A stretch of DNA of 64,000 nucleotides, taken from positions 294,270 through 358,269 of the IMG/VR virus record IMGVR_UViG_3300027759_006101; one strand, 5' to 3'. Made by a program: the position numbers and the translations under genes. Under the pieces are notes generated by a model, which did no database searches, was not told the origin of the DNA, and worked only from the letters and a program-made list of their open reading frames with translations. Below, piece by piece: positions 3,001 through 22,309 of the stretch (position 1 is its first letter; every line of letters starts with the position of its first letter).

Positions 3001-3892
3001 GTTAAGTGTCAATAATTTTATTATATTAAATGCACAAAAAGGAGATAGAATTTTACTTTTCAATCAAACAAATGAAACTGAAAATGGCATCTATTATTAC
3101 GACATTGTGAGAAACTTCTATCTGTCAAGAGATGAATTTTTAGATTCTGATGATGAAATTTCTGTTGACAAAAAAGTATATGTTTCATCTGGTTTTGCAA
3201 ACACAGGATATTACGGCTTAAGCTTTGATGAAGACGTAGTAAGTCCAGGAATTGGTATTACTCCAATATATTGGACAAAAATTAGAGAAAACACAACATT
3301 GACTGACGCTAGAGTTGCATCAATTGCAAATATAAATCTAACAAATCCTCCATCGAAAGTTGATGAAATTACTTTAAGAAAATTTGATAGAATTTTACTT
3401 AAAAATCAAACATCACAAACTGAAAATGGAGTCTATATAGTTTCAAGCATAGGTAATTCAAATGTTTGGACCAGAGCCACAGATTTAGATTCAAGTTCAG
3501 AACTAATACCTCAACTTTCTGTCAATGTTGGATACGGCACTACTAATTCTAATAAAAACTTTAGAATTAAATTGCCAGTTCCAAGAACAATCACTAATAC
3601 ACAAACAACTGCTTACATATTAAACACCGATAACATTAATTGGATTGACACATCTTCATCTGAGTTATATGAATCAAGCCCTGAATTATGGCAAAACTTA
3701 AAAGCAGGGTATGAAAATGCTGTTTTTCTTGGGACAGCAAAAATGGGTGTAGAGTCAACAGCTTCTAGTCGTAGTTTTGGAATTGCAGTAAGAACACCAA
3801 ATTCTACTATTTTATCAGGTTTTGGAATCACACAAAATGGTAAAGTAAGAGGATTAAATTTCAAAGTAGAATATAAAATTACAAAGGACTAA
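2..3892 (+). CDS. Large tail-fibre/virion structural protein, 5'-partial (>=1296 aa)
   Basis: The frame is open from nt 2 (IYTVSAIGNSQKQIFNYENALSSW...), so the ORF-track TTG at 62 is not the true start. S/T/N-rich beta protein with several copies of the phage fibre module [IL]DG...GDRILLKNQT...NG[IV]Y...W.RATDLD (e.g. 2360-2510, 3030-3230, 3307-3540). Confidence 0.75.
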   Translation: MYTVSAIGNSQKQIFNYENALSSWTFDIFESVLSEGPAGSHNVSPNFKKQIKGIYQIASIASTETGQIFVPEISFPSFQNYENFFGSEGKGSSLLQDLDIDWYKQDFQKYSVKAVLNVADVSLIPTTSGTAISSLVRSHSGLGNTILQSNDSVLIFVGSGSSSSSALNGIYRPSFTGIGSVYFTQHEDFYFDTKFESTTDKKSLASPYERPSVVSVEQGYMGVGTTFQSKYVYMQGEVAIRANTFSSDYSTEDLEKYLHTGTETFKIGSEIRLNTNTQDLDKFPRLAPIQHTLLADLALDTVSNDILIVKRNGNQLYSLVSGDPSLFYFQINDRVFYYATDEDIYNSSIRKSTSGIYQIIYIDTNFNYYLRKVKNNSVNGHLDYSKRLVAQSSIGGTIFYLARPETSTTVFTWTNSNYPVSLSDVYLVSTGNTVIPKTYSTDYTINPSNGQISVVGSGWTGTLYVHLYADNTVPSYDAEPKQILNRYYYIPRVTKDRFIFTSGVALGSSTWQIDSEHFQVVNSIGTATTTEIKFNRDRSSWLADYDTSKNYSSVAQHILSSDSVSNYFFTDRLSSDGYYFKTGLGNSSVFNDTNLIDPITLNKIGLFTGDFYLEKLINSGIGATLTDWYAGLGLTVDANVLILTNKTTPDYSDKIIDSSYQSSYYDDLNRLILQDKTGKRYQKVYTFKRNEYQTVNLDYHSAFGVTLSPIQAILTNSAGSGTFVLYYDPANTNRNTSNRSWIDVATRSSFLCATGNTGSVPDFNDITYVPVIGPLSSPSGSGNTAQFDGYVVGTGDTIMIRNQSDSTKNGIYTSVVRNKYTLVRATDLNATSELYELGRVSFGNRIFELNLPDDNSSYNLGASALNTPLIWKNLGSEYVIDVVGLGHTNFSNLNALPDYINGREISEGNKVFFFGQTTNSEKIVARFRKKVMPNLTRVGNGSSTTQFQISSLYVNDANRNINYELYYDPSLTSVGTHPVQWFRQNFISNFSPVSFGSTIPLSVNNFIILNAQKGDRILLFNQTNETENGIYYYDIVRNFYLSRDEFLDSDDEISVDKKVYVSSGFANTGYYGLSFDEDVVSPGIGITPIYWTKIRENTTLTDARVASIANINLTNPPSKVDEITLRKFDRILLKNQTSQTENGVYIVSSIGNSNVWTRATDLDSSSELIPQLSVNVGYGTTNSNKNFRIKLPVPRTITNTQTTAYILNTDNINWIDTSSSELYESSPELWQNLKAGYENAVFLGTAKMGVESTASSRSFGIAVRTPNSTILSGFGITQNGKVRGLNFKVEYKITKD

Positions 3893-5095: not shown

Positions 5096-7222
5096 ATGGC
5101 AAGTCAATACAATGAAAATTCCATACAGATCTTGGAAAGCCAAGAAGCTGTAAGGACACGACCAGCAATGTACATCGGTGACACTGGTAAGAGAGGTCTT
5201 CATCATTTAGTCTGGGAAATTTTGGATAACTCAGTTGACGAGCATATGGCTGGTCACTGTACTAAAATTGATGTCATTGTTTCTAAAGACAACCGTTCAG
5301 TTACAGTTATTGATAATGGAAGAGGCATTCCTGTAGCCGTAAAGCAAGAAGATCCAAAGAAACGATCTACTCTTGAGATTGTACTTACTGAACTTCACGC
5401 TGGTGGTAAGTTCGGCGATGATGGCTCTGGCTATGAAGCATCAGGTGGACTTCACGGTGTAGGAGCTTCTTGTGTAAACTTTCTTTCATTAAGGTTAGAT
5501 GTAGAAGTTTGCAGAGACAAGAAGAAGTATCAACTTAGCTTTGATCGTGGAATTCCTGCGTCTCAAGTGACCGAAATTGGAAATTCATCCTCTACTGGTA
5601 CAAAAATTACTTTCTCTCCTGACTATAATATTTTTGGTCAATTTGCAGTAGAAGATGCTTTTCGTGAAGTTCTCTTGGATGATTTTGACATTGATGAGAA
5701 ATTTGCAGAATGTTCTGGCAAATGGCGCAAAGCACTAATCAATGGCCCTGTTAATCTTGAAGTATTCAACCAATGTTTTGGATATATGAACTATGCAGAG
5801 GAAATATTAACAAAAGCCTTTGATTCTTGGTTCAACCATTCTTGGAAAAATATTCATTTTGATGAGTCAGTTATAATCCGCAGATTGCGTGAAACTGCTT
5901 ATCTTAACGGCGGACTGAAGATTGTTTACAAAAATGAGCACACTGGTACCAAAGAAGAATTTTTCTTTGAAGGCGGAATTGCTGATTACGTAAGTTATCT
6001 TGCGTTTTCTCGGACAGGGGTGTATCCACTCAAGCCATTCTTCTTTGATAACAAAAGTGGCAAAGTCAATGTTCAAGTTGCATTTCAATACAGTGAAGAT
6101 GATGAAGAAACAATTTATACCTATGCAAATAATATTTTTACCACTGACGGTGGCACTCATCTTAGTGGCTTCAAAACATCTATCACAAGAGTAGTAAATC
6201 AATTTGCACGTTCTTCAGGTGTTCTTAAGGAAAAAGAGCCAAACCTTTCCGGAGAAGATATCCGAGAAGGCATTATTGCCATAGTTTCTGTCCGCCTACC
6301 ACAACCTCAATTTGAAGGACAAACTAAAGGCAAACTTGGTTCTCAAGAAGTTGAAGGTGTTGTAAATAGGCTCTTTTCAGAGGCAATCACAGAATATTTT
6401 GAAAAAAATCCTTCTGTAGTCAAGAATATTGCAGAAAAAGCTTTGAGAGCAGCAAAGGCACGAGCAGCAGCAAAGAGAGCATCTGAAAATATCAAGAGGC
6501 AAGGTTTTCTTGGTCGTTCAGGTTCTCTTCCTGGAAAGTTATCTGATTGTAATTCGGAAGATGCAATGTCTACTGAACTTTACATTGTTGAAGGTGACTC
6601 TGCAGCTGGAAGTTGCAAGGGTGGTCGTGACCCAGAATATCAAGCAGTTATGCCTATTCGTGGAAAGATTATCAATCCAGAGAAGAACGATTATGCCAAA
6701 CTTATGCAAAATGAAGAAGTTGGTGCAATCATTTCAGCTGTTGGTACTGGAATAAAAGATGATTTCAATATTAAGGATCTTCGATATGGCAAGATTGTAA
6801 TTATGACTGACGCTGATGATGATGGTGCTCATATTGCAACTCTTTTGATGACATTCTTTTATAGATTTATGCGCCCTCTCATAACAGAAGGTCATTTATT
6901 TATTGCTAAGCCACCACTTTATCGAGTCAATTACAAGAATGATAAATTTTACATTCATACTGAAGCTGAACTTGATGGGTACAGAAAGAAGTATGGTGAT
7001 AAAATAGAAGTCACAAGATTCAAAGGTTTGGGTGAAATGGATGCTGATGAACTTGGCACAACTACTATGGAAATTGGCAAACGTCAAATTATCAAAGTAA
7101 ATGTCGAAGATGTTGAAGAAGCATCAAGAATCCTAAATGTTCTGATGGGCAGTAATGTTGCTCCTCGCAAAGAACATATCATCGAAAAGTCTGCTGCAAG
7201 GATATTAGAAAACAATGGCTAG
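5096..7222 (+). CDS. gyrB: DNA gyrase subunit B (708 aa) with a ~70-aa insertion in the ATPase domain
   Basis: Motifs AVRTRPAMYIG, EILDNSVDE, DNGRGIP, LHAGGKF, GGLHGVG, GGTHLSG, EGQTKGKL, VEGDSAAGS, PIRGKIIN, MTDADDDG, RFKGLGEM. Lacks the long E. coli-type TOPRIM insertion. Confidence 0.97.
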   Translation: MASQYNENSIQILESQEAVRTRPAMYIGDTGKRGLHHLVWEILDNSVDEHMAGHCTKIDVIVSKDNRSVTVIDNGRGIPVAVKQEDPKKRSTLEIVLTELHAGGKFGDDGSGYEASGGLHGVGASCVNFLSLRLDVEVCRDKKKYQLSFDRGIPASQVTEIGNSSSTGTKITFSPDYNIFGQFAVEDAFREVLLDDFDIDEKFAECSGKWRKALINGPVNLEVFNQCFGYMNYAEEILTKAFDSWFNHSWKNIHFDESVIIRRLRETAYLNGGLKIVYKNEHTGTKEEFFFEGGIADYVSYLAFSRTGVYPLKPFFFDNKSGKVNVQVAFQYSEDDEETIYTYANNIFTTDGGTHLSGFKTSITRVVNQFARSSGVLKEKEPNLSGEDIREGIIAIVSVRLPQPQFEGQTKGKLGSQEVEGVVNRLFSEAITEYFEKNPSVVKNIAEKALRAAKARAAAKRASENIKRQGFLGRSGSLPGKLSDCNSEDAMSTELYIVEGDSAAGSCKGGRDPEYQAVMPIRGKIINPEKNDYAKLMQNEEVGAIISAVGTGIKDDFNIKDLRYGKIVIMTDADDDGAHIATLLMTFFYRFMRPLITEGHLFIAKPPLYRVNYKNDKFYIHTEAELDGYRKKYGDKIEVTRFKGLGEMDADELGTTTMEIGKRQIIKVNVEDVEEASRILNVLMGSNVAPRKEHIIEKSAARILENNG

Positions 7223-9734
7223 AAGACCAAAGGTTGAAGATACAACAACAATTATTGATAAAGAAGACCACATTATCAACAAAGAGTTCATCGAACTCTT
7301 AGATGATCGGTTTACCAATTACGCTTTTGCAGTAATGGAAGATCGTGCTCTGCCTGATGCAAGGGATGGTTTAAAGCCATCCCAACGCAGAACTCTTGTC
7401 GCAATGAATGACTTGAATTTGCGTTCATCTGGTAAGACTAAAAAATGTGCAAAGATCTGTGGTGATGTTTCAGGTAACTACCATCCTCACGGAGAAGCGG
7501 TTGTCTATCCAACACTTGTTCGTATGGCACAAGTTTGGTCTTTGCGCTACCCATTGATTTCCCCTCAAGGAAACTTTGGCTCACCAGCACCAGAAGACAA
7601 GCCTGCTGCTATGCGTTACACCGAAGCGAAATTTTCTGCTTTTGGTGATCAAATGGTTGCTGAGCTTTCAAATCAAGTTGTAGATTATGTATCTAACTAC
7701 AATGATGAGTTGATGGAACCAACTGTTATGCCTTCCCTGATTCCAAACCTATTAATCAATGGGTGTTCTGGAATTGCTGTTGGCTGGGCGACAAATATGG
7801 CACCTCATAACTTGCGTGAAGTGGCTAATTTGATTGACGCTTATATCAAAAATCCTGAAATTACAGTAGATGAAATTTTAGAGATTGTTCCAGGCCCAGA
7901 TTTCCCTCTACCTTGTAAGATTCTCGGAACTAATGGAGTGAAGAGTTACTTTACAACTGGAAGGGGCTCTATTCAATTGGAAGGCTACCATACAATTGAA
8001 TCTGAGAAGAACGGTCAGCTTTACATTAAGGTCACTGCACTTCCATACGGTGGTTCTGCTGAAGGCTTTTGTCGTGAAATCAAAGAACTTGTTGAATCTA
8101 AGAAAATTGAAGGCATCACAAACCTCAAGAATCTTACAAACAAGAAGGGTATGGATGTCAGGATTTGGATCCATAAATCAGCAAATTCAAATGTTGTTTT
8201 AAATCTAATTCTCAAGCATACTTCTTTGCGAACAAATTTCTCTGTTAACTCAACAGTACTTATGGGTGGCAAGAAAGTTGTTGAAAATGTTCCTATTATC
8301 AAACTTGTAGAAACATTTGTAGAACACCGCAAAGATGTTTTAACTAGAAAATTTAATGCAGAACTTGATAAAAATAATCGAAGACTCCATATCCTTGATG
8401 GTCTCATTGGCATTACCGCTAAAATTGATTCGGTTATTAAGCTCATCCGTCAAGCTGATGATAGGAATGTGGCACAACAAGAACTCATTGCCCAAGGATT
8501 TGTAAAGTCTCCTGAGCAGGCTGATGCAGTTTTGAAGATTACTTTGGGAAATCTTACTAAACTTGATGTCAACTCTATGACTGATGAGTTCTCAAAGCTC
8601 ACACACCGAAATGAGTGGCTTGTTGAACAGCTTTCTTCAGAAAAGAAAATGCTCAGGCTAATTTCTAAAGAGCAACTTGATCTTGCTGCAAAGATTGGCG
8701 ATGATAGACGGTCAGAAATTGTACCTTCCATAGAAGATTTCAATTATGAAGACTTGATTAAAGAAGAGCAAATCATCGTATCTCTTACAAAAGATGGCTA
8801 CATCAAGCGTGTTCCATTGGATACTTTCAAGACACAAAATCGTGGTGGAAAAGGTGTCATTGGCGTAAAGTCTCGTGAAGAAGATGAGGCTTCAGACTTC
8901 TTTTCAGGCACGACTCACGATTTGTTCTTGTTCTTTACAAATCAAGGTAATTTGCTGAAGAAAAAGGGCTATGAAATTCCATTAGCAACAAGAACTTCCA
9001 AGGGTGTTCATCTTAACAATCTTTTGAACTTGACTGAAGCAGAATCAGTATCATCAACAATTACACTCAAAAGTTTAGATGTTGATGGCAACTTTGTTAT
9101 GGTCACTAAGAAAGGTCTCATCAAGAGGTCTGAGATTAGAGACTACAACACCAGTCTTCGTAAAAGAGGACTAAAGGCCATCTCATTAACTGAAAATGAT
9201 GAGTTAGCATTTGTAATGCAAACAGATGGTACTCAAGATGTTATGATTGTCACAGCAATGGGAATGGCTGTAAGGTATTCAGAAAATCTTGTACGGTGTA
9301 TTGGCAAAAATGGGCAAGGTAGTCGCTCAATGCTTCTAAAAGCAGAAGATACAATTGCTGCAGTTCTAGCAATTGATGCTGATGCTGATCCTTCAATTCT
9401 GGTAATTACTGAATTTGGTAAGGGTAAGAAGACTTTTGCTTCTGAATACCGTTCTACTGCTGGTAGAGCAGTCAAAGGCCAAAGAACAATCAACACTCTT
9501 AAGAGAGAAGCTTCTGGAAAAATTGTAAGTGCAGTGGCATTATCAGATAATGATGAAATATTAGTGCTTACAAACAAGGGCAAAATGATGAGATGTAATC
9601 TTGACTCTCTTCGAAATAAATCCAAAGTCACACAAGCAAATAACATTGTGTCCCTTGATGACGGAGACACTGTGCAAACTGTTAGTGTAGTTCCAACTTC
9701 AAATAAGGACTTTGAAGAGGAGTTTACAGAATAA
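7215..9734 (+). CDS. gyrA: DNA gyrase subunit A (839 aa)
   Basis: RALPDARDGLKP, YHPHGE, catalytic AAMRYTE, GIAVGWATNMAPHNL, GyrA-box QNRGGKG and C-terminal pinwheel repeats. Overlaps the gyrB stop by 8 nt. Confidence 0.97.
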   Translation: MARRPKVEDTTTIIDKEDHIINKEFIELLDDRFTNYAFAVMEDRALPDARDGLKPSQRRTLVAMNDLNLRSSGKTKKCAKICGDVSGNYHPHGEAVVYPTLVRMAQVWSLRYPLISPQGNFGSPAPEDKPAAMRYTEAKFSAFGDQMVAELSNQVVDYVSNYNDELMEPTVMPSLIPNLLINGCSGIAVGWATNMAPHNLREVANLIDAYIKNPEITVDEILEIVPGPDFPLPCKILGTNGVKSYFTTGRGSIQLEGYHTIESEKNGQLYIKVTALPYGGSAEGFCREIKELVESKKIEGITNLKNLTNKKGMDVRIWIHKSANSNVVLNLILKHTSLRTNFSVNSTVLMGGKKVVENVPIIKLVETFVEHRKDVLTRKFNAELDKNNRRLHILDGLIGITAKIDSVIKLIRQADDRNVAQQELIAQGFVKSPEQADAVLKITLGNLTKLDVNSMTDEFSKLTHRNEWLVEQLSSEKKMLRLISKEQLDLAAKIGDDRRSEIVPSIEDFNYEDLIKEEQIIVSLTKDGYIKRVPLDTFKTQNRGGKGVIGVKSREEDEASDFFSGTTHDLFLFFTNQGNLLKKKGYEIPLATRTSKGVHLNNLLNLTEAESVSSTITLKSLDVDGNFVMVTKKGLIKRSEIRDYNTSLRKRGLKAISLTENDELAFVMQTDGTQDVMIVTAMGMAVRYSENLVRCIGKNGQGSRSMLLKAEDTIAAVLAIDADADPSILVITEFGKGKKTFASEYRSTAGRAVKGQRTINTLKREASGKIVSAVALSDNDEILVLTNKGKMMRCNLDSLRNKSKVTQANNIVSLDDGDTVQTVSVVPTSNKDFEEEFTE

Positions 9735-13423: not shown

Positions 13424-13915
13424 TCAGTCGGTATCGTCAGACATATAAGTTTCAAAATCCCAGTCTTCATCCAACTCATCCATATTGTCCCATACATTTC
13501 GTAAAACAAATAAATTTGTATGGGATAATATGGATAAAATTAAACTATCAACAAGAGAACAAACAGAAAAATAATTATTTTTCTTATAATCAGTGAATTT
13601 TACAGATGCATATATGACATCTCCTACTCTGTTCTCTATACAAATACTTTCAACACTTGAATTATAATGATTCAGTAAACGCAAAAACATTTGATGTATG
13701 ATCATAACGTGAGCGTTTAAGTGATAATCCTTAATAACAAAATTCAACAAACTAGCTTCGTACGGAGCAATCTCACAGGCCACTTTTTTCAACCCATCAC
13801 TCAGTAATATAAAAACTCTGGTTTCAGAGTCTACTATTACTTTTTCTAAAAGGATAGGAATAGTTTCATAACGATCATCATTGTGAATATTATTTCTATC
13901 TATTTTTTTTGGCAT
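13424..13915 (-). CDS. Divergent bifunctional nuclease (BFN/DUF151)-like protein (163 aa)
   Basis: EIAPYEASLL ~ IGPFEAQAI; IHQMFLRLLNHYNSSVESICIENRVGDVIYASV ~ THDLL...VERVVI......FYA; SLVDSLILS...LFVLRNVWD ~ RPSDAIALA...IYV.EEV. Acidic tail. Confidence 0.65.
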   Translation of the reverse strand: MPKKIDRNNIHNDDRYETIPILLEKVIVDSETRVFILLSDGLKKVACEIAPYEASLLNFVIKDYHLNAHVMIIHQMFLRLLNHYNSSVESICIENRVGDVIYASVKFTDYKKNNYFSVCSLVDSLILSILSHTNLFVLRNVWDNMDELDEDWDFETYMSDDTD

Positions 13916-14301
13916 TTTGAATTTCCTGTATTACACACTCTGCAAAGTTTGCAAATTTTATTGTTTAATATATTTGAAAATATAAGCATCAATGAACCAA
14001 TAATCATTAAGTAATTTATTTCTTTATGATCGGAATGCTTGTGTTCATTTAAAAAATAACCTGCAAATGTTATGATAATTCCTAAAGAGAAAAACCATAA
14101 TATATTGTAATTTTTGTGAGTTTTGATTCCAAAGCAAACATTATAAATATTTATTGCGCAAGATATAAATAATAAAATAAATTCTATTTTTGAATCAAGC
14201 ATCAAGTAAAGAGCTGAAGTAGGCAAAAATATCATAAATAAAGGTAATATCGTGCAGTGCAAAACACAAACAATACTAGCTATATTTGCGAATTTTATCA
14301 T
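13900..14301 (-). CDS. MerC-domain membrane protein (133 aa)
   Basis: N-terminal ASIVCVLHCTILP matches the MerC-family S..CAIHC...P motif. Four hydrophobic segments, a HKHSDH loop and a Cys-rich C-terminus (CKLCRVC...C). ATGA-coupled to dnaK. Confidence 0.8.
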   Translation of the reverse strand: MIKFANIASIVCVLHCTILPLFMIFLPTSALYLMLDSKIEFILLFISCAINIYNVCFGIKTHKNYNILWFFSLGIIITFAGYFLNEHKHSDHKEINYLMIIGSLMLIFSNILNNKICKLCRVCNTGNSKCQKK

Positions 14302-15992
14302 AGATTGACTTTCTTTTTTGCTATGTCATGAACTTTTAGAGAGATTTCTTTAATAGTTTCTTTTGCACTTTCTAAGAGACTTGAAAGTAACTCAATATTG
14401 TGACTTTTGCCATCTTGTTCTATTGATTTCTTGAGATCTAGTAATTCATTAACATCAAGTTTATCTAAAACATTAGTTCTAAGTAATTCTTCAATTTGAA
14501 TTTCACAATCATAAAGAAGATCGTGCATATTTGTAATCTTTCTAAAGTGCTCATCTTCGTCTTTGTGTTGTTGTGCTTCATCAATAATTTTTGATATTTC
14601 TTGACTTGATAACGACGATCTGCCTGTAATCTCAATGTCTTTTTCTATTCCATTATCCAAACTTGTGGCTTTGACTGAAAGAATTCCATTTGGATCAATT
14701 TGAAACGTGACTTCAAGTTTTGGCAATCCTCTTGGTTTTTCTTCTACCCCATCAAGTTTAAATTCCCCAAGCAACAAATTATCTACTGTTTTGGGTCTCT
14801 CTCCTTGATAAATCTTTACATCAACTTCTGTTTGATTATCATATGCAGTTGTAAAGATTTCCTTAACAACTGAGGGTACTTGAGTATTTCTGGGAATTAA
14901 GATACTCATAATCCCACCTTGTGTCTCTATACCTAAAGAAAGTGGTGTAACATCAAGCAAATAAACTTCTCTGCTTGATTTTCCTGTCAAAACTGATGCT
15001 TGAATAGCTGCACCGACAGAAACAGCTTCGTCAGGATTAATTGACTTATTGGGCTTTTTTCCGAACTTTTCTTCTATTACTCTTTCTATTAGTGGAATTC
15101 TTGTACTGCCACCAACAAAAACAATTTCATCAATTTTGTCAGTTTTTAAATTAGCGTCTCGTAATGCATCATTGACACAGAGCATTGTTTTATCAATGTA
15201 TGTCTTGATAGATTCTTCAAATTCTTCACGATTAATCTTGAGTGGCTCTTTTCCAACCATTACATTAGCCACAGTCATATGAGAAAGCATCTTTTTAGTC
15301 TTCTCAGAGATATTTCTTAAATCAATCTGATCTAAAGTAACATTAGTTTTGCTAAGAATTACTTTTCCAAGTGCTTCATCAAAATCAACACCACCAAGAG
15401 ATGTATTACCAGATGTAGATTGAACGTGGAAGTCAACACCGTCCATAAGCTTAAGCAAGGTGACATCAAATGTTCCTCCGCCTAAGTCATATACTAAAAT
15501 CGTTGCATCATTTTTCTTATCTAGACCATATGCCAAAGATGCTGCAGTAGGTTCATTGATGATACGTAATACTTTAAGACCAGCTAATTCTCCAGCTGTT
15601 TTAGTAGATTGCCTTTGGTCGTTGTTGAAATATGCAGGGACAGTAATTACAGCTTCAGTTACTTCTTTGCCCAAATGCCTCTCTGCGCAATTTTTAAGAT
15701 ACTTTAGGATGTATGATGAAACTTCTTCTGGGCTGTAGGATTTGCTATTTATTTCAAATCTCTTATTAGTCCCCATTTGCCTCTTTACAACACGTATAGT
15801 ATGAGAAAAGGGCAAATGCTGCTCCATATCAACAGCATATTGCCCTACATAAATCTCATCACCAAAACTGACTACGCTGGGAGTAATTCTTTCACCTAAA
15901 TCATTTGGGATAACTTCTGGCTGATCTTTGTCATTTACATAAGAAACTACACTAAAAGTACTTCCTAAATCAATTCCAATTGCGTAACTCAT
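14298..15992 (-). CDS. dnaK: Hsp70/DnaK-family chaperone, compact (564 aa)
   Basis: GIDLGST, TPSVV, AVITVPAYFN, RIINEPTAA, YDLGGGTFD, VGGSTRIP, NPDEAV..GAAIQA, LLDVTPLSLGIET, IYQGER, FQIDPNGIL. Confidence 0.95.
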   Translation of the reverse strand: MSYAIGIDLGSTFSVVSYVNDKDQPEVIPNDLGERITPSVVSFGDEIYVGQYAVDMEQHLPFSHTIRVVKRQMGTNKRFEINSKSYSPEEVSSYILKYLKNCAERHLGKEVTEAVITVPAYFNNDQRQSTKTAGELAGLKVLRIINEPTAASLAYGLDKKNDATILVYDLGGGTFDVTLLKLMDGVDFHVQSTSGNTSLGGVDFDEALGKVILSKTNVTLDQIDLRNISEKTKKMLSHMTVANVMVGKEPLKINREEFEESIKTYIDKTMLCVNDALRDANLKTDKIDEIVFVGGSTRIPLIERVIEEKFGKKPNKSINPDEAVSVGAAIQASVLTGKSSREVYLLDVTPLSLGIETQGGIMSILIPRNTQVPSVVKEIFTTAYDNQTEVDVKIYQGERPKTVDNLLLGEFKLDGVEEKPRGLPKLEVTFQIDPNGILSVKATSLDNGIEKDIEITGRSSLSSQEISKIIDEAQQHKDEDEHFRKITNMHDLLYDCEIQIEELLRTNVLDKLDVNELLDLKKSIEQDGKSHNIELLSSLLESAKETIKEISLKVHDIAKKKVNL

Positions 15993-16008: not shown

Positions 16009-16362
16009 TTATTCAGGTTCTTCTGGTAATACAGTTCCTCCAGGCACATATCCTTCCATCAATTCTTTGAGAGCATCTTTATTTTCAAGCTTTTTTCTAA
16101 ACTCAAGACTTTCATTTTTTGTTATTGGCCCTATCGCTATATTTTTATCTTTGTCTTTTGGTAAATTGTCTTTATACTCGTGAGCCATTGACATTAATTG
16201 TATTATTGCAAAAGTATCTTTACATTTTGAACAACGCATAATAGCGTAAACTTCTACTTCTGACTTAGGCAACCAACCCAAGTGAGATAATTTTGTAAAT
16301 TGAGTTTTACAATTTCTATTAAGACAACACTTCGGTTTGCCGATGATAGTTTGATGGAACAT
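16009..16362 (-). CDS. Small Cys-rich putative Zn-binding protein (117 aa)
   Basis: Start re-called to ATG 16362, 4 nt after SD GGAGGTG. Contains CCLNRNC and CSKC Cys clusters and a PITKNE..EF..KL helix. Confidence 0.7.
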   Translation of the reverse strand: MFHQTIIGKPKCCLNRNCKTQFTKLSHLGWLPKSEVEVYAIMRCSKCKDTFAIIQLMSMAHEYKDNLPKDKDKNIAIGPITKNESLEFRKKLENKDALKELMEGYVPGGTVLPEEPE

Positions 16363-16613: not shown

Positions 16614-16640
16614 ATAATCTACAGCGTCGTAGATTATTTT
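16614..16640 (+). terminator. Terminator-like hairpin after the small ORF
   Basis: ATAATCTAC (16614-16622) / GTAGATTAT (16629-16637), 6-nt loop, T-rich 3' side. Overlaps the stop of the convergent helicase gene. Confidence 0.6.
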
Positions 16641-18400
16641 AATTCAAACATTTTCCAAGCTCGTTCATTCTTATAAACTTTCTTTCTCATATTTACGTGA
16701 GATCTCAAATTCTTATGACTTGAGGCAAAATCAATAATAATAGCTTCAGGTTTTCCATTCTTTATAGAATCTTCAACATCTTTGCCTACACATCTTAAGA
16801 CTCTTCCAACTTGCTGATAAGTTGTGACTGGTGATGAACTAGTCCCAGCAAGAATTAGACAAGAGATTTTAGGAGCATCAACACCAACATTTGCCCACTG
16901 TGTTGCAATCAAGACTATTTCATTATTCTCAACTGCATTAAGCATTCTTCGACGATAATTCTTTTCCTCATCGCTTGGGTCTATTTCGCCTTTATCGCCA
17001 CCAGGTACAAATACTGCGTCCTCTATCATTCCTTCAAGAATATTGCCGTGTTCCATCCTTTCAACAAGAATAAGAGTAGGAGTACCCTTTTTTTTCATAG
17101 CTTCGGCAAATTGTTTTATTCTAAAATTTCTTTCCCAGCAATTAACAATATTTAAATTGTAAACTTCATGATAAGTTTGGCCAGGTTCTACAGTATCTAT
17201 ATTTACTACAAAGATTTTGGGTGGAACTAAGTACCCTCTCTCCACGAGATCACTGGCACTTACTTCGCATACTTTACCGCCCAAAGTACCTTCTATCCTG
17301 ATTTCTTGATTATCGGTACGAAAGGGAGTTGCAGATAAACCCAATCTGTAATATGCATTCTTTGCTTGATTACCAATTTCTTCAGTAACAACAGCTGCTA
17401 AATGTGCTTCGTCTATAATCAAAGCATTACAGTTCTTGATTACATCTCTGACTTGAGATTTTTGAAATAATATATTCTGCCTATTGTCCCAAGCTGATTG
17501 AGCTTTCTTATAATCTGACAATTCTTTTTTTACTAAGATTGACAATTCACGATCATACTGTTTTCGTAATTGAATTAAGTTTTTTGCAGAACTTTCTTCA
17601 GCTTTTTCAACTTTCTCATACAAGTCTGAAAGTTTTCCTGAAGCCACATGAGTTGCTTTTTTGTAGTTTGATAGAGCTACTTCTAATTCTTTTTGAAGAA
17701 AAGCAGTTGGTTTACTTCCTTCCCCATTATCGTCAACAATTTTGCTGTTTGTTTCAACATATTTTCTATCAAAAGCTATCAAAGCTGTCTGATATGTAAT
17801 GACGTTGATGCCTTCCATATTTAAGTCGCATAATCCGCCACCGGCAATTCCAACTTTGACTTGATTGCCATTGAACCTTAAATACTTTTCAAATTCTTTT
17901 TGCGTCTGTTTTAATAATTCAATTGCTGGGACTATAAATACAACTGGCTTGACTTTCAATTTTTGAAAGATATAACATGAAGTCATAGTTTTACCAGCAC
18001 CAGTAGCTAAAGCAAGCATTCCTCGTTGATTTTTCAAGGCTAAATCGCCTGAAAAAACTTGATAATCTCTAAGTTCTTTACCCATAAAATCACAAGTCAG
18101 CTCGTAATCTCTTGTAGGCTTGACTCTTTTGTCAATAAATTTATAATTTATTTTCAATTCATCAAAAAGTTTAGCTACACGCATAGTAAGGCCAGTAGGA
18201 AAAGATTGATTCCGCTTTACATAAAGAGAAATTTTCCCATCCCATTGTCCAGTCTTAAACTTTGCAGACCATTCTGAATCAGGAACTTTGTAGGACAACT
18301 CATTCCTCAAAGCTTCTTGAATTGGGTATGATAATTTACCAAAACTATCGTCAGTGTTAATTAGCACACTACGGTCATTGTAAACTTCAATCTCAACCAT
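16634..18400 (-). CDS. Superfamily 2 DNA helicase (UvsW/ResIII-like, DEAH) with a coiled-coil insertion (588 aa)
   Basis: Q-motif LRDYQ, Walker A ATGAGKT, DEAH, motif III SAT, motif V GVDAP, motif VI QQVGRVLR. Confidence 0.92.
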   Translation of the reverse strand: MVEIEVYNDRSVLINTDDSFGKLSYPIQEALRNELSYKVPDSEWSAKFKTGQWDGKISLYVKRNQSFPTGLTMRVAKLFDELKINYKFIDKRVKPTRDYELTCDFMGKELRDYQVFSGDLALKNQRGMLALATGAGKTMTSCYIFQKLKVKPVVFIVPAIELLKQTQKEFEKYLRFNGNQVKVGIAGGGLCDLNMEGINVITYQTALIAFDRKYVETNSKIVDDNGEGSKPTAFLQKELEVALSNYKKATHVASGKLSDLYEKVEKAEESSAKNLIQLRKQYDRELSILVKKELSDYKKAQSAWDNRQNILFQKSQVRDVIKNCNALIIDEAHLAAVVTEEIGNQAKNAYYRLGLSATPFRTDNQEIRIEGTLGGKVCEVSASDLVERGYLVPPKIFVVNIDTVEPGQTYHEVYNLNIVNCWERNFRIKQFAEAMKKKGTPTLILVERMEHGNILEGMIEDAVFVPGGDKGEIDPSDEEKNYRRRMLNAVENNEIVLIATQWANVGVDAPKISCLILAGTSSSPVTTYQQVGRVLRCVGKDVEDSIKNGKPEAIIIDFASSHKNLRSHVNMRKKVYKNERAWKMFELK

Positions 18401-18904: not shown

Positions 18905-19126
18905 TTAGCAATCCTTTGCTATTACCGAATCATCTTCATTTGATGAATTTGGATCTAAATCCATATCTGTAGTCAAAGGAATTACCAATTCGTCCTTGAT
19001 AGCTACTACTTCATCTTTATTTTCTTTTTCATCCGCCCAGACTACCGAATTATCAACTTCTACTTCTTCGCCTTCTGCATTAGTAAAGTTTTCGATTTTG
19101 CCTGTTGCTCTCTTAATCATACTCAT
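18905..19126 (-). CDS. Small acidic hypothetical protein (73 aa)
   Basis: ATGA-coupled to dnaJ and 1 nt from the next gene; D/E-rich. Confidence 0.7.
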
Positions 19127-20103
19127 AACATTTTTCTTCCTTTTCTTGATTCAATATAAGACTTCAAAGCGTCAGTTTCAACTTCATTTAAGTCGTTAGG
19201 TATATTATACTTGAATTTTATATGCAAATCAGAATAATTATTTTCGTCTACTGGTATTCCTTTATTCTTGATGATGTGAACATAATCATTTCTAATAGAT
19301 TTAGAAAATTTGAAATTTAAAATATTTCCATTAATATGTTTGTATTTGAAATTTGGTTCTACTATGCATAGGATAGGATCTATTTCAAACTCGTGTAACA
19401 TATTTAGGTTACTATCAAAATCAAACGAATCTTGCTTTTTCACATTAATTTCTATCATCAAAGGGCCTGGAGCTTGATGTTTATCACCGAAGTTGCCACG
19501 ATTAGGTAACATAACACTCTTGAAGCATTGACCTTTCTTGATTGTAAGATCAAACATTTCTTTTGCAATCACGTAGCCTTTACCCGAACACTTGTTGCAA
19601 AGTGATTCTGGTCTTTCTCCTCGACCTTGACAAGTTTGACAGGGGCCAGCATAATTTCTTATATGGAAGAAACCAACGTTTTGAACAACATAATGTTCTC
19701 CACTTCCCATACAATCAGTGCACAAATTGATTTTGCCAAAACCACCATCACCACTACAATCACGACAAGGCATCATTCTCTCATAAAATATCGGTTTTAT
19801 CGCATCACTGAAACATTCTTTAATCGAAAGTTCTATCTTTAACAAAACAGGGACATTGAGATTGCGGCGAAAAGCATTTAAGTGAGTTTTCCTAAATGGA
19901 TTATCAGGAAAAGGCATGTGATTCTGAGGCTTGGGGTTTAAGACATCCTCATAGGCCTGAGAAATTTCCTTAAACTTTTCCTCAGCATCAGATTGTTTAT
20001 TTACGTCTGGATGATATTCTTTGGCTAACTTTCTGTAAGCTTTTTTAGCATCATCTACGCTAGAATTCTCTGGTATTCCTAAAACTTCATAGGGACTAGG
20101 CAT
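19123..20103 (-). CDS. dnaJ: DnaJ/Hsp40 co-chaperone, class A-like (326 aa)
   Basis: J-domain with [16 protein letters not shown] (HPD). Four CxxCxGxG motifs ([32 protein letters not shown]) and a C-terminal domain. G/F region nearly absent. Confidence 0.95.
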
Positions 20104-20110
20104 AAACTCA

Positions 20111-20782
20111 TTATACTAATTTAGATAGCATATTCTGTATTTTATTAGACGGGCAGACAGAACTTTCACCAACACCAATATCTGCGTGTTGTCCAGTTAC
20201 TCCCATAATAGTTCCGTATATCAAATTATCAACACCAATTACCATTCCACCAGATGAACCTTCTAATATGTCAGCATCAATAAAAATTATGTCATTCCAA
20301 GCTGGCATATTTGAATCTGCGATGCTTTGATGAATATTTGACACTCTACCAACAGTTGCAGTGTCGTGAAATCCCTCAGGAGCACTTATAACTGCTATAA
20401 TATCTCCAACTTCTAAAGCATCACTATTGCCAAATCTCAAGGGAGCAACATTAGGATCAAACTCTAATCTTACTGCTCCCGAGTCAATAGAGGGATCGGA
20501 AACTAAAAATGATGCAGCAATGTATTTTTTGCCATCAAATGTACACATAATTTCAGTAAGTGTTTGATCATTAGGAACTACGTGGCCAGCAGTGACAACA
20601 ATATTATTTCCAATATAAAAGCCACTACCTGACCAGTTTTTTTTACCAGATCTTACATAAATAGTACAGGAAGAGCCTAATCCTGTTTGTATTGTTTTTT
20701 TCACAGGATCATTGACTAAATCTGTTGTTTGCGAAGTCTTTACTAATGACTCCAATAAATTACAGTCTATCTTAAAATTCAT
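20111..20782 (-). CDS. Trypsin-like (S1, HtrA-type catalytic domain) serine protease without PDZ (223 aa)
   Basis: [12 protein letters not shown] (His), DSGAVRL (Asp), [11 protein letters not shown] (Ser), [14 protein letters not shown]. No signal peptide. Confidence 0.88.
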
Positions 20783-21243
20783 TTTATAACTTTGTAGATA
20801 ATTTCATCTTTTTTTATAGGACCGAATCTTCTACTGTCGTCAGAGTTATTCAAGTTATCTCCAACAACAAAATAAGAATCTTCACCTAACTTATACTCTT
20901 GAACTGCATCTCCGTAGTTTGCTTTAGCTTCAAGAATAGATCTGAAAGAGTTATCAAGTAAAAAAACCATTTGAAACTTTTGGGAATCTAATATGTAGTA
21001 ATAATAATCCCCAGGAGTAAAAATAATTCTTTTTACTATAATAGCATCTTCACTAGTATCATTTATTACTACAATATCTCCTCTATTGTATTTGTTTTCT
21101 CTCTTGGCTAAAACAATTTGTCCATTACGTAATGTTGGCATCATAGATTGTCCAACAATTACTATCAACTTATAAGGTTGTAAATAAAAAGATAGACATA
21201 TCAATAAACTAACAAAGCAAGAAACTATAAATTTCTTATCCAT
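20779..21243 (-). CDS. lepB: Signal peptidase I (S26 family), ~154 aa
   Basis: TM anchor, VGQSMMPTL (catalytic Ser), RGDIVV, IVKRII (catalytic Lys), GDN..NSDDSRRFG. Start chosen at ATG 21243 after SD GAGGTG (the ORF track starts at 21279). Confidence 0.88.
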   Translation of the reverse strand: MDKKFIVSCFVSLLICLSFYLQPYKLIVIVGQSMMPTLRNGQIVLAKRENKYNRGDIVVINDTSEDAIIVKRIIFTPGDYYYYILDSQKFQMVFLLDNSFRSILEAKANYGDAVQEYKLGEDSYFVVGDNLNNSDDSRRFGPIKKDEIIYKVIK

Positions 21244-21307
21244 ACTCCACCTCACTGGTATGTTATGAGTTAGAGTCATTTTTGTTTTTTTGCTTGCTCT
21301 TTTAGAA

Positions 21308-22309
21308 TTACTTTTTAATTAAAATAGTGTTCCAGTCAACATTTGCTAATTTAGGAACACCAGGACCCCAATTTTTTTCTTCTCCCGAATCAACAACAGT
21401 ATTTTCCATAGAACAGATATTATGTAATGCAACCATCATATCTGCTTGGCAAAATTGGTTTCCAAACTCCTGCAATAAATTTAATTTTTTCAATGCAGAC
21501 TTTATCAATGCACAAATTCCAGCAACAAATGGTGATGCTTGACTTGTACCTGACATTTTACAATATTCATTTCTTAAGAAAGTTGAATATATATCTACTC
21601 CTGGAGCAACAATATCTACAGTTTCATCTTTTGATGTAAATGTTGCAAGTCTTCCGCCTGAATCTAATGCAGCAACAGCAATTACTTCATCATATCTAGC
21701 CGGGTAATTAACACTTTTGGAATCATTGCCAGCAGCTGCAATAACAACAATACCTTTTGACACTGCTTCTAAAATCAAATCATGAATAAACTTTGGTGGC
21801 TCAGAAGATGAACCTAAAGACATATTGATTATGTCAACATTTAATTCAATAGCTTTTTTTAATCCAGCGGCAATAGTTTCAAAACTACCAGAGCCATCAT
21901 CATTTAAAACTTTTATTGGAATAACTTTGCAATTTGGAGCAACTCCTACAACACCAAAGTCATTATCACTTCCAGCTATAATTCCGGCAACGTGTGTCCC
22001 GTGTCCAGAAGACTTATCTTCCCAGGAATCACTATCCGAACAATTAAAGACAGATTCTTTTGTCCAGCATTCTGATAAGTCAACGTGTTCTGCAATTCCA
22101 GTATCTAAAATTGCTACAACAACATCTTCTCCTTTAGTTAATTGCCAAACATTTTGTATTGAAGATAGTCCCAAACCCCAGTTTTGAGTTTGAGAAAGAG
22201 CACTGAAAGGTACAGGTGTAACTTCTAAATCTTCAATTGGAATGAATTGAATATTTTCAGACAATTCTTCCACAACTTCGACAGAGATTTCATTATTATT
22301 TTCGGACAT
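21308..22309 (-). CDS. Subtilisin-like S8 serine protease (333 aa)
   Basis: VAILDTG (Asp), HGTHVAGII (His), AAAGN (oxyanion), SGTSQASP (Ser). Short acidic N-terminal pro-segment, no signal peptide, SD GAGGT. Confidence 0.95.
   Translation of the reverse strand: MSENNNEISVEVVEELSENIQFIPIEDLEVTPVPFSALSQTQNWGLGLSSIQNVWQLTKGEDVVVAILDTGIAEHVDLSECWTKESVFNCSDSDSWEDKSSGHGTHVAGIIAGSDNDFGVVGVAPNCKVIPIKVLNDDGSGSFETIAAGLKKAIELNVDIINMSLGSSSEPPKFIHDLILEAVSKGIVVIAAAGNDSKSVNYPARYDEVIAVAALDSGGRLATFTSKDETVDIVAPGVDIYSTFLRNEYCKMSGTSQASPFVAGICALIKSALKKLNLLQEFGNQFCQADMMVALHNICSMENTVVDSGEEKNWGPGVPKLANVDWNTILIKK

What the first reader, a model, noticed from the sequence alone, without database searches (positions are those of the whole stretch)
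15228..15850. DnaK has the structural signature of a GrpE-independent, fast-exchanging Hsp70
Seen (by-eye alignment to E. coli DnaK): subdomain IIB is about 19 aa shorter. The FD...EAAE helix is 27 vs 36 aa and the S274-R302 loop is 19 vs 29 aa. The cleft salt-bridge residues are lost: K55/R56 align to V/D in QYAVDM and E264 aligns to N. Known: this loop and the K55-E267/R56-E264 bridges slow ADP release and confer GrpE dependence in DnaK, and HscA lacks them and is GrpE-independent. No grpE is present in the window. Inference: the phage evolved a two-component DnaK/DnaJ machine uncoupled from host GrpE.
Basis: partly seen in the sequence, partly recalled or inferred. Interest (0 to 1): 0.62.

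Follow-up and report, generated by a model that had tools for sequence, protein, structure and literature searches.

The report
Phage Hsp70 stripped of GrpE docking
A 358-kb lake phage encodes its own Hsp70 chaperone that has lost the latch, loop and contact residues through which bacterial DnaK is controlled by the exchange factor GrpE, so it probably runs with only its own DnaJ partner; this has not been measured.

Summary
The gene at window 14298-15992 (-) encodes a 564-aa Hsp70. Its subdomain IIB is 19 aa shorter than in DnaK: 9 aa at the helix-turn-helix tip and 10 aa in the hairpin loop. K55/R56 are replaced by V54/D55, and E264 by N227. E267 is kept.

Eighty cellular DnaKs and 76 other viral DnaKs keep all these features almost without exception. 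Only 3 of 20 GrpE-contact residues survive here. No grpE is detectable in the 358-kb record or in a complete 379-kb relative. Four other huge phages with canonical DnaK do carry grpE.

- The V/D swap is ancestral to a large clade of freshwater jumbo-phage Hsp70s (about 220 clusters).
- The truncated IIB is a later, single-origin cassette under purifying selection. Its distribution conflicts with the tree of the rest of the gene, which points to recombination.

Lack of a phage grpE alone is not diagnostic, because most DnaK-bearing phage contigs lack one.

GrpE independence is the best-supported reading. It remains an inference until ADP release is measured. I class this as a new variant of a known kind (HscA/HscC-like tuning, arrived at convergently).

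The parts
14298..15992 (-). Phage Hsp70 gene, 564 aa (P0001): NBD, linker, SBD-beta and helical lid.
   Evidence: ORF and translation. Pfam HSP70 533 bits. AF2 pLDDT 88.2 and DnaK fold by Foldseek.
14973..15992 (-). Nucleotide-binding domain, residues 1-340. Catalytic D8, K70, E147, D169, T174 and D176 are intact.
   Evidence: Residue mapping to E. coli DnaK D8, K70, E171, D194, T199 and D201. These are invariant in 220 clade members.
15828..15833 (-). V54-D55 in subdomain IB, aligned to DnaK K55-R56. These are the basic halves of both cleft salt bridges, and R56 is also a GrpE contact.
   Evidence: In the whole phage clade the residues are V/I/A and D/E. In cellular DnaK, position 55 is K/R in 80/80 and position 56 is R in 74/80.
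15210..15395 (-). Truncated subdomain IIB, residues 200-261: 63 aa over the span that is 82 aa in DnaK. This is the short cassette.
   Evidence: IIB-only tree: one clade at 99 SH-aLRT. dN/dS 0.156.
15330..15347 (-). Shortened helix-turn-helix tip of IIB (T216-D221 loop). Nine residues are missing relative to DnaK 246-257, including the GrpE contacts L257, Q260 and R261.
15303..15314 (-). N227 aligns to DnaK E264 (acid lost). E230 aligns to DnaK E267 (acid kept, but its K55 partner is gone).
15249..15254 (-). G247-K248, a two-residue turn that replaces the 10-aa exposed 'GrpE signature' loop of the IIB beta-hairpin. The gap is the same one seen in HscA.
   Evidence: The review PMC8215388 states that the signature loop is deleted in HscA and absent in HscC.
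14301..14972 (-). Linker (VYLLDVTP), DnaK-type SBD-beta and a short lid without the acidic C-terminal tail. A383 and V390 match DnaK A429 and V436. Q358 sits at arch position 404.
   Evidence: There is no HscC-type insertion in loop L1,2.
19123..20103 (-). Phage DnaJ, 326 aa (P0008): J domain with HPD, four CxxCxGxG zinc-finger motifs and a DnaJ C-terminal domain, with no G/F-rich region. It is the presumed partner.
   Evidence: Conserved synteny in all relatives, including the 53%-identity one.
16009..16362 (-). Conserved 117-aa zinc-ribbon ORF, 16 nt upstream of hsp70. Function unknown; listed as a candidate cofactor only.
   Evidence: C13, C18, C44 and C47 are invariant, with 54-80% identity across relatives. 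No Pfam or PHROG match. The complex prediction gave no answer.
13900..14301 (-). MerC-like membrane protein gene whose start overlaps the hsp70 stop by 4 nt.
   Evidence: Pfam MerC 68 bits. The overlap and order are conserved.
16634..18400 (-). UvsW-like SF2 helicase lying between hsp70 and dnaJ. It is part of the conserved gene block.
   Evidence: Pfam ResIII, DEAD, UvsW_N and Helicase_C. Synteny.

Best explanation
This is a phage-specific Hsp70 of the DnaK type. It has a DnaK-like substrate pocket, linker and catalytic centre. Its nucleotide-binding cleft has lost the elements that hold ADP in DnaK and that dock GrpE.

The proposed history has two steps.
1. In the ancestor of a large freshwater jumbo-phage clade, the IB residues K55/R56 became V/D. 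That removed the basic halves of both cleft salt bridges.
2. In one sublineage the distal tip of subdomain IIB was cut back by 19 aa. This removed the GrpE-signature loop, the Q260/R261 contacts and E264, and further contacts such as E31 were replaced.

The inferred result is an Hsp70 that releases ADP spontaneously and fast, as HscA does. It would cycle with only the co-encoded DnaJ (window 19123-20103) and perhaps a second J-protein just upstream of the window. It would be insensitive to host GrpE and probably to host ClpB, which also docks on IIB. Its likely job is folding or assembling phage proteins, and the window carries eight ORFs of 974-3479 aa.

Shown here: the sequence and predicted-fold features, how unusual they are, purifying selection, the absence of grpE, synteny with dnaJ, and the cassette-like inheritance of IIB.

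Inferred: fast exchange, GrpE independence and the clients.
For: Basic observation:
- IIB is 19 aa shorter and the V54/D55/N227 substitutions are present.
- AF2 models show that the helix hairpin and the beta-hairpin are both shaved at the same distal end.

Rarity:
- 80 cellular DnaKs keep the KR/EE residues and the 23/29-aa segments.
- Of the 80 viral loci, 76 lie outside this clade; of these, 69 are fully canonical, 1 has KRAE with full-length segments, and 7 have K55 with N/S at 56, T/S at 264 and a 25-aa loop.

GrpE contacts:
- Of the 20 DnaK residues that touch GrpE in 1DKG (PMC2940730 Table S1), only E128, L131 and G132 are identical here.
- E31, Q57, V59, Q260, R261, P284 and Y/F285 are 95-100% conserved in cellular DnaK. 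All are replaced or deleted in the 118 short-form clusters.

Literature: HscA and HscC lack the same loop and bridges. HscA releases ADP 700-fold faster and needs no NEF (PMC8215388).

No grpE:
- Pfam search of the 358-kb record.
- HMM built from 56 GrpEs with hmmsearch --max, best E 1.7.
- The complete 379-kb relative G001.

Contrast: LR756502, LR745206, LR756504 and Lak-A2 have canonical DnaK and their own GrpE at 69-141 bits. In 52 of 80 cellular loci grpE lies within 3 kb of dnaK.

The gene is functional, not decaying:
- Catalytic residues, R167, Q378, the linker, V436 and A429 are invariant.
- dN/dS is 0.055 for the NBD outside IIB and 0.156 for IIB.
- More than 120 clusters share 77-100% identity, on contigs up to 380 kb.
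- The gene occurs in at least 18 lake and freshwater runs.

Partner: dnaJ is conserved in the same block as far as the 53%-identity relative.
Against: - No kinetics, binding or genetic data exist. Everything rests on analogy with E. coli DnaK, HscA and Hsc70.
- E267 is retained. D55 could form a charge-swapped bridge with R226 or K231 in IIB. I could not measure distances because the tool does not expose model coordinates.
- The record is 89% complete, so about 40 kb is unseen.
- Absence of a phage grpE is also true of phages with a canonical DnaK, so it adds little on its own.
- The host is unknown, and its GrpE could have a compensating surface.
- Long-IIB relatives with the same V/D swap still keep E31, R261 and P284. 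The V/D change alone therefore did not release all constraint on the GrpE surface. This may mean that those forms still use GrpE.
Confidence: 0.6

Rival explanations
1. The phage Hsp70 still depends on host GrpE. It would bind through the retained IA contacts (E128, L131, G132, and G33 at the dnaK756 position) and a co-adapted host GrpE surface. On this view the IIB changes tune exchange rather than abolish it.
For: - G32, E128, L131 and G132 are conserved.
- Long-form relatives keep E31, R261 and P284.
- Most DnaK-bearing phages have no grpE and presumably borrow the host's.
Against: - 17 of the 20 1DKG contacts are changed or deleted, including the charge reversal R56D and the loss of Q260/R261, which are 99-100% conserved in cells.
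- The signature loop, whose absence marks the GrpE-independent HscA and HscC, is gone.
Confidence: 0.12
2. GrpE has been replaced by an unrecognised phage-encoded cofactor, either an exchange factor or an escort protein, that binds the remodelled IIB/IB surface. Candidates are the conserved 117-aa zinc-ribbon ORF immediately upstream of hsp70 and the genes translationally coupled downstream.
For: - The zinc-ribbon ORF is 16 nt from hsp70, is as conserved as Hsp70 itself (54% identity in the relative where Hsp70 is 53%), and has four invariant cysteines.
- From general knowledge: mitochondrial and plastid Hsp70s use small zinc-ribbon escort proteins (Hep1/Zim17).
- IIB is under purifying selection, as expected for a surface that still binds something.
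Against: - No family match to zf-DNL or any other Pfam or PHROG family.
- The Atlas returned only hypothetical viral clusters.
- The complex prediction gave no answer, which counts neither way.
- Adjacency alone is weak evidence.
Confidence: 0.15
3. The IIB remodelling is driven mainly by escape from host factors that dock on IIB, such as the ClpB M-domain, regulators or a defence sensor. Altered nucleotide exchange would then be a side effect. The two IIB alleles would be maintained by host-dependent selection.
For: - IIB behaves as a discrete two-allele cassette on a shared background. Long and short forms are 81% identical outside IIB and 40% inside. The rest-of-gene tree rejects a single short clade (AU p 0.0019). 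The IIB-only tree unites the short forms at 99.
- PMC8215388 notes that the ClpB-contact residues of DnaK are not conserved in HscC. That these contacts lie on subdomain IIB is from general knowledge.
Against: - No host factor has been identified.
- The IB changes (V/D) are clade-wide and lie on the cleft, not only on the outer face.
- The short allele dominates: about 118 clusters against 7 long-form representatives in the same subclade, which looks more like a sweep than balancing selection.
Confidence: 0.1
4. The protein is a degenerate or non-cycling Hsp70 acting as a holdase or scaffold, and the IIB loss reflects decay.
For: - Scores fall below the NCBIfam DnaK and HscA equivalog cut-offs.
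- IIB evolves about three times faster than the rest of the NBD.
Against: - All catalytic and allosteric residues and the linker are invariant.
- dN/dS is 0.055-0.16 in every domain.
- The models are confident and show a complete fold.
- The conserved DnaJ has an intact HPD motif.
Confidence: 0.03

Closest known systems
Canonical bacterial DnaK (E. coli DnaK; Geobacillus kaustophilus DnaK, PDB 2v7y/4ani)
   Same: - Best sequence and fold matches: 42-49% identity, E 1e-134 to 2v7y, Foldseek E 1e-60 or better.
- DnaK-type substrate pocket (F426, A429, V436), VLLLDVTPLSLG-type linker, R167 and Q378 for J-domain coupling.
- Lacks the lobe-I segment 76-101, as Gram-positive-type DnaKs do.
- A type-I-like DnaJ is encoded nearby.
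   Different: - No K55/R56, no E264, no GrpE-signature loop, and IIB is 19 aa shorter.
- 17 of 20 GrpE contacts are changed.
- No acidic C-terminal tail (564 aa against about 610-640).
- Q rather than M/L at arch position 404.
- No grpE in the genome.
- Below the NCBIfam DnaK cut-offs.
HscA (Fe-S cluster Hsp70; GrpE-independent, 700-fold faster ADP release)
   Same: - The same 10-aa gap in the IIB hairpin loop.
- Both cleft salt bridges are broken.
- Equal overall identity (42%).
- Proposed to work the same way, with intrinsic fast exchange and no NEF.
   Different: - No N-terminal extension.
- The pocket is DnaK-like (A and V where HscA has F426 and M433).
- The partner is a zinc-finger DnaJ, not HscB, and there is no HSCB_C domain in the genome.
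- HscA loses E267 and keeps a basic residue at 55. Here it is the reverse.
- The losses are therefore convergent, not inherited.
HscC (E. coli YbeW) with DjlB/DjlC
   Same: - Length of 550-580 aa, deletion of lobe-I residues 76-101, GrpE signature absent, V at position 55 and E at 267.
- Genomic association with a membrane protein. Here it is a MerC-like gene overlapping the stop codon; for HscC the J-partners are membrane-anchored.
   Different: - Only 31% identical.
- No 4-8-aa insertion in SBD loop L1,2 and no nine-residue lid helix-B deletion.
- E. coli HscC falls far outside the phage clade in the tree.
- The J-partner is soluble and DnaJ-like.
DnaK genes of other huge phages (LR756502, LR745206, LR756504, Lak phages) and of moraphages (PMC12619734)
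   Same: Hsp70 and DnaJ genes carried by jumbo phages, including freshwater ones.
   Different: - Those are canonical DnaKs (KR/EE, full IIB, contact residues E31, Q57, V/I59, Q260, R261, N282, P284, Y/F285 largely intact; Lak-A2 deviates at three of the eight).
- Four of the six checked also encode GrpE.
- The moraphage genes nest within Flavobacteriaceae.
- The present clade is at most 47% identical to any cellular DnaK sampled, and has the eroded interface.

Membership tests
Hsp70 superfamily (Pfam PF00012) | Full-length match above the gathering score, with NBD, linker, SBD-beta and lid architecture. | tested here: met
   533 bits against a cut-off of 20.6, covering residues 4-551. The AF2 model has all domains, and Foldseek finds DnaK structures at E 1e-60 or better.
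Hsp70 superfamily (Pfam PF00012) | ATPase catalytic residues D8, K70, E171, D194, T199 and D201. | tested here: met
   All present in P0001 and invariant in 220 clade members.
Canonical DnaK (NCBIfam NF001413 / TIGR02350 equivalogs) | Score above the curated equivalog cut-off. | tested here: not met
   563.4 against 648, and 548.5 against 822.55.
Canonical DnaK (GrpE-dependent type of Brehmer 2001) | Cleft salt bridges K55-E267 and R56-E264. | tested here: not met
   V54, D55 and N227 replace them; only E230 (DnaK E267) remains. Cellular DnaK keeps all four in 74-80 of 80.
Canonical DnaK (GrpE-dependent type of Brehmer 2001) | Long exposed IIB loop carrying the GrpE signature. | tested here: not met
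   The S274-R302 equivalent is 19 aa against 29. The modelled hairpin has a 2-residue turn.
Canonical DnaK | Conserved GrpE-contact residues (1DKG list). | tested here: not met
   3 of 20 are identical. E31, R56, Q57, V59, Q260, R261, E264, N282, P284 and Y285 are changed or deleted.
Canonical DnaK | DnaK-type substrate pocket and arch (F426, A429, V436; M/L404). | tested here: inconclusive
   F, A and V are kept. Position 404 is Q in all short forms.
Canonical DnaK | Slow intrinsic ADP release stimulated by GrpE. | not testable with these tools
   Needs stopped-flow kinetics with purified proteins.
HscA | Score above the TIGR01991 / NF003520 cut-offs, and an N-terminal extension of about 17 aa. 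| tested here: not met
   490 against 708.55, and 486 against 620. There is no extension.
HscA | F at the A429 position and M at the V436 position (shallow, proline-specific pocket), with HscB as partner. | tested here: not met
   A383 and V390. No HSCB_C domain in the record.
HscA | GrpE-signature loop deleted and cleft bridges absent. | tested here: met
   The same 10-aa gap. The bridges are broken, although by different residues.
HscC | Insertion of 4-8 aa in SBD loop L1,2 and a 9-aa deletion in lid helix B. | tested here: not met
   No L1,2 insertion; the lid has a 4-aa gap only.
HscC | Length 550-580 aa, lobe-I 76-101 deleted, GrpE signature absent. | tested here: met
   564 aa, with 7 aa in place of DnaK 74-104. 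However, identity is only 31% and HscC is a distant outgroup in the tree.

The most novel reading that the evidence does not exclude
Subdomain IIB is the docking site for the exchange factor and for ClpB. In these phages it may be a mobile, two-allele cassette. On this reading a truncated, GrpE-blind version arose once, on a long branch, and has been moved by homologous recombination across closely related lake jumbo phages. It now outnumbers the full-length allele. That would be a natural, ongoing selective replacement of co-chaperone coupling in an Hsp70. It also offers a graded series for testing the Brehmer/Mayer model of nucleotide-exchange tuning: canonical phage DnaK with grpE, then V/D with long IIB, then V/D with short IIB.
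Probability: 0.3. Interest if true: 0.7.

Novelty: new variant of a known kind. Interest (0 to 1): 0.55.

Why it matters
NEF-independent Hsp70s are known only from the specialised bacterial HscA and HscC. If this reading is right, a virus reached the same solution independently on a DnaK-type scaffold with a generalist pocket. That would show that GrpE dependence can be dropped without narrowing the substrate site.

The clade supplies natural intermediates. One group has lost the salt bridges but keeps an intact IIB. Another has lost the bridges and has a truncated IIB. Both sit on backgrounds that are 81-90% identical outside IIB. These are close to ready-made constructs for measuring what each element contributes to ADP release and to GrpE and ClpB binding.

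For phage biology, it suggests that some jumbo phages run a self-contained folding machine (Hsp70, two J-proteins and Hsp20) insulated from host co-chaperone control.

Tried and rejected
- **Complex prediction.** Hsp70 NBD (residues 1-345) with the neighbouring 117-aa zinc-ribbon ORF scored 0.31 against a mark of 0.32. The verdict was 'no answer', so I do not use it either way.
- **GrpE docking not attempted.** I did not dock GrpE on the NBD. Only one job was allowed. Without DnaK (positive) and HscA (negative) calibrations, a pass could reflect fold memory, and a fail is uninformative.
- **Weak Pfam GrpE hit in relative G002.** The hit (11 bits, E 0.02) is a coiled-coil ORF that matches only the long-helix part of the model and has no GrpE match in hmmscan. 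Rejected.
- **HscC membership.** Considered because of length, the lobe-I deletion and V55. Rejected on SBD features, 31% identity and tree position.
- **Moraphage lineage (PMC12619734).** Considered and rejected. Those genomes reach at most 307 kb, and their DnaK nests within Flavobacteriaceae.
- **GrpE search of the 380,750-bp NCBI contig.** This contig carries an 86%-identical short form, but the record is not held.
- **Expression.** Metatranscriptome contigs from two runs overlap hsp70 and dnaJ at 90-99% identity. They come from relatives, and DNA carry-over cannot be excluded, so this is not counted as proof of transcription.
- **tRNAs as a host clue.** There are none in the window. The host remains unknown.
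Full report
**What is there.** The window is the last 64 kb of a 358,269-bp linear IMG/VR virus record that CheckV rates 89% complete. The DNA recurs in at least 18 freshwater and lake metagenome runs. The ORF at 14298-15992 (-) encodes a 564-aa protein, P0001. It matches Pfam HSP70 end to end at 533 bits. It scores below the NCBIfam equivalog cut-offs for both DnaK (563 against 648; 548 against 822) and HscA (490 against 708). Its best solved relative is the Gram-positive-type DnaK of Geobacillus (2v7y, E 9e-134). Foldseek of the AF2 model (pLDDT 88.2) returns DnaK structures only.

**Checking the observation.** Several alignments give the same picture: MAFFT against E. coli DnaK, HscA and HscC, two family-wide alignments, an alignment with 80 cellular DnaKs and the HMMER alignment to 2v7y.
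- The stretch equivalent to DnaK 240-262 is 14 aa instead of 23.
- The stretch equivalent to S274-R302 is 19 aa instead of 29. The 10-aa gap is the same one seen in HscA.
- K55/R56 align without nearby gaps to V54/D55 in QYAVDM, and E264 aligns to N227.

The AF2 models make the alignment structural. In a 76%-identical long-form relative (P0131), IIB has helices 201-220 and 228-245 and a hairpin with strands 250-261 and 264-273. In P0001 the helices are 201-215 and 222-236, and the strands are 241-246 and 249-254, joined by a two-residue turn. Both deletions therefore shave the same distal tip of IIB.

**Is it unusual?** Yes.
- In 80 cellular DnaKs from many bacterial and archaeal phyla, with or without the lobe-I insertion, position 55 is K/R in 80, position 56 is R in 74, position 264 is E/D in 80 and position 267 is E in 80. 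The two IIB segments are 23 and 29-31 aa in 79.
- Of 80 Hsp70 loci sampled from IMG/VR, 76 lie outside this clade. Of these, 69 are fully canonical, 1 has A at position 264 with full-length segments, and 7 have K55 with N/S at 56, T/S at 264 and a 25-aa loop.
- I took the 20 DnaK residues that contact GrpE in 1DKG from PMC2940730 Table S1. P0001 is identical at only E128, L131 and G132.
- E31, Q57, V59, Q260, R261, P284 and Y/F285 are 95-100% conserved in the cellular set. In P0001 and all 118 short-form clusters they are L, M, Q, deleted, deleted, G/E/D and K.

**What the literature says these elements do.** According to the review PMC8215388, which cites Brehmer et al. 2001:
- The K55-E267 and R56-E264 bridges close the DnaK cleft.
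- HscA lacks them and the GrpE-signature loop, and releases ADP 700-fold faster.
- HscC also lacks them.
- Neither HscA nor HscC is expected to use GrpE.

That is the basis of the functional inference. It is an analogy, not a measurement.

**grpE.** Pfam GrpE finds nothing at E<=10 in the 358-kb record. I built an HMM from 4 phage and 52 cellular GrpEs and ran it with --max over all 1032 ORFs of 50 aa or more. The best E-value was 1.7. A 378,848-bp relative rated 100% complete, which carries the long form, also has none. A weak hit in a third relative is a coiled-coil ORF, not GrpE.

As a contrast, I looked at six other huge phages that carry a DnaK. All six DnaKs are canonical (KR/EE, 23/29-aa segments). 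Their GrpE contacts are intact, except in Lak-A2, where three of the eight conserved ones differ. Four of the six encode a clear GrpE at 69-141 bits. However, none of 18 IMG/VR records of 70 kb or more with Hsp70 has grpE. That set includes two complete genomes with a canonical DnaK. Missing phage grpE alone therefore proves little. The clade-specific erosion of the interface is the stronger argument.

**Evolutionary context.** Word searches returned about 220 clusters of this phage-type Hsp70 (563-606 aa, apart from two outliers), on contigs up to 446 kb. The nearest cellular DnaKs are only 41-47% identical and come from unrelated phyla.

The V/I/A-D/E pair at positions 55/56 is present throughout the clade. 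The 10-aa loop deletion occurs only in a subclade of 118 clusters. A few lineages have only a shortened helix tip.

Within that subclade, full-length and truncated IIB versions coexist.
- Outside IIB, long-short pairs are as similar as short-short pairs (median 81% against 82.5%, up to 90%).
- Inside IIB, long-short pairs drop to 40%, against 64% for short-short and 68.5% for long-long.
- Nucleotide identity falls from about 0.8 to about 0.5 across IIB only.
- A tree built without the IIB columns interleaves the two forms. None of 200 bootstrap trees unites the short forms, and the AU test rejects their monophyly (p 0.0019).
- A tree of IIB alone unites all short forms at 99 SH-aLRT, on a stem of 0.76 changes per column.

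The simplest reading is one origin of the short cassette followed by spread through recombination among related phages. Chimeric metagenome assemblies could mimic this. Against that, both alleles are seen in many independent assemblies.

**Is it functional?** The evidence points that way.
- Catalytic residues, R167, Q378, the linker and the DnaK-type pocket (F426, A429, V436) are invariant.
- Among six short-form genes, dN/dS is 0.055 for the NBD outside IIB, 0.156 for IIB, 0.116 for SBD-beta and 0.138 for the lid.
- A 326-aa DnaJ lies at 19123-20103 (-). It has an HPD motif, four CxxCxGxG motifs and a C-terminal domain, but no G/F region.
- The gene block is conserved down to the 53%-identity relative. 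Its order is DnaJ, UvsW-like helicase, zinc-ribbon ORF, Hsp70, MerC-like gene, 163-aa ORF.
- Elsewhere the record also encodes a second J-protein, an Hsp20 and possibly a Clp-like AAA+ protein.

**Mechanism proposed.** With no basic residues on IB to latch IIB, and with the IIB tip removed, the cleft should open spontaneously. ADP would then leave without a catalyst. The J-protein would trigger hydrolysis on client binding, and rebinding of ATP would reset the cycle. That makes a two-component machine.

Loss of the GrpE surface, and probably of the ClpB surface, would insulate it from host co-chaperones. That ClpB docks on IIB is general knowledge and was not tested here. Likely clients are the phage's own very large proteins. 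The window alone has eight ORFs of 974-3479 aa, including one with PKD and RCC1 repeats and one with a PA14 domain.

I put 0.6 on this reading. The rivals are continued use of host GrpE (0.12), an unrecognised phage cofactor such as the adjacent zinc-ribbon protein (0.15), IIB change driven by escape from host IIB-binding factors (0.10) and a non-cycling protein (0.03).

**Comparison with known kinds.** It works like HscA and HscC but is a member of neither.
- It lacks HscA's extension, the F/M pocket and HscB.
- It lacks HscC's L1,2 insertion and is only 31% identical to it.
- It is a DnaK-type Hsp70 that fails the DnaK-defining tests for GrpE coupling.

Phage DnaK genes have been reported. 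I found no paper describing a GrpE-uncoupled phage Hsp70. I class it as a new variant of a known kind, with interest 0.55.

**Limits.**
- There is no biochemistry.
- The host is unknown.
- The exhaustive protein search was not run.
- The only complex job gave no answer.

Noticed in passing
window 16009-16362 (-): A 117-aa zinc-ribbon ORF sits 16 nt upstream of hsp70. C13, C18, C44 and C47 are invariant. It is 54-80% identical in all relatives, which makes it as conserved as the Hsp70. It has no Pfam or PHROG family, and the Atlas gives only hypothetical viral clusters. It may be an Hsp70 cofactor.
   Followed up: partly
window 13900-14301 (-) and 13424-13915 (-): A MerC-like four-helix membrane protein gene overlaps the hsp70 stop by 4 nt. 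It is followed by an overlapping 163-aa ORF with a weak bifunctional-nuclease-domain hit. The order is conserved in every relative, which hints at a membrane-proximal role.
   Followed up: partly
window 20111-22309 (-): Three protease genes lie in a row directly beyond dnaJ: Trypsin_2-like, S26 signal peptidase and S8 subtilase. The arrangement is conserved in a relative on a 380-kb contig.
   Followed up: partly
window 62-3892, 22359-61961: There is an unusual density of giant ORFs: 1276, 2856, 1791, 989, 1450, 1221, 974 and 3479 aa. The 3479-aa ORF has about 10 PKD domains plus RCC1-like repeats. The 1791-aa ORF has a PA14 domain. The 2856-aa ORF has no Pfam match. These are plausible chaperone clients.
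   Followed up: partly
G000:C1:289885-290877 (L002:1456-2448), about 3.4 kb upstream of the window start: A second J-domain protein of 330 aa. It has an HPD motif and a C-terminal region of unknown family.
   Followed up: partly
G000:C1:207818-208138 and 286373-286522: The same phage record also encodes an Hsp20 (48 bits). A 459-aa ORF has a sub-threshold ClpB_D2-small hit and may be a Clp-like AAA+ protein.
   Followed up: no
L014:2408-5470: In the complete 379-kb relative, the UvsW-like helicase match is split by about 1.2 kb of inserted sequence between residues 356 and 357. This may be an intein or a homing-endonuclease insertion.
   Followed up: no
window 15241-15378: One low-depth contig from a lake metatranscriptome library matches both flanks of IIB but not the 136 nt between them. 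This is what a relative with the other IIB cassette would give. The evidence is weak: depth 2.6 and only 26 nt on one side.
   Followed up: no
window 5096-9734 (+): Phage-encoded DNA gyrase B and A subunits (708 and 839 aa) lie next to the chaperone block. They are conserved in relatives.
   Followed up: no
window 15954-15962 (-), residues 11-13: The phosphate-1 loop reads GSTFS instead of GTTNS (T11S, N13F). This holds in all short forms and in about two thirds of long forms. An aromatic residue at this position is the eukaryotic Hsp70 state.
   Followed up: no
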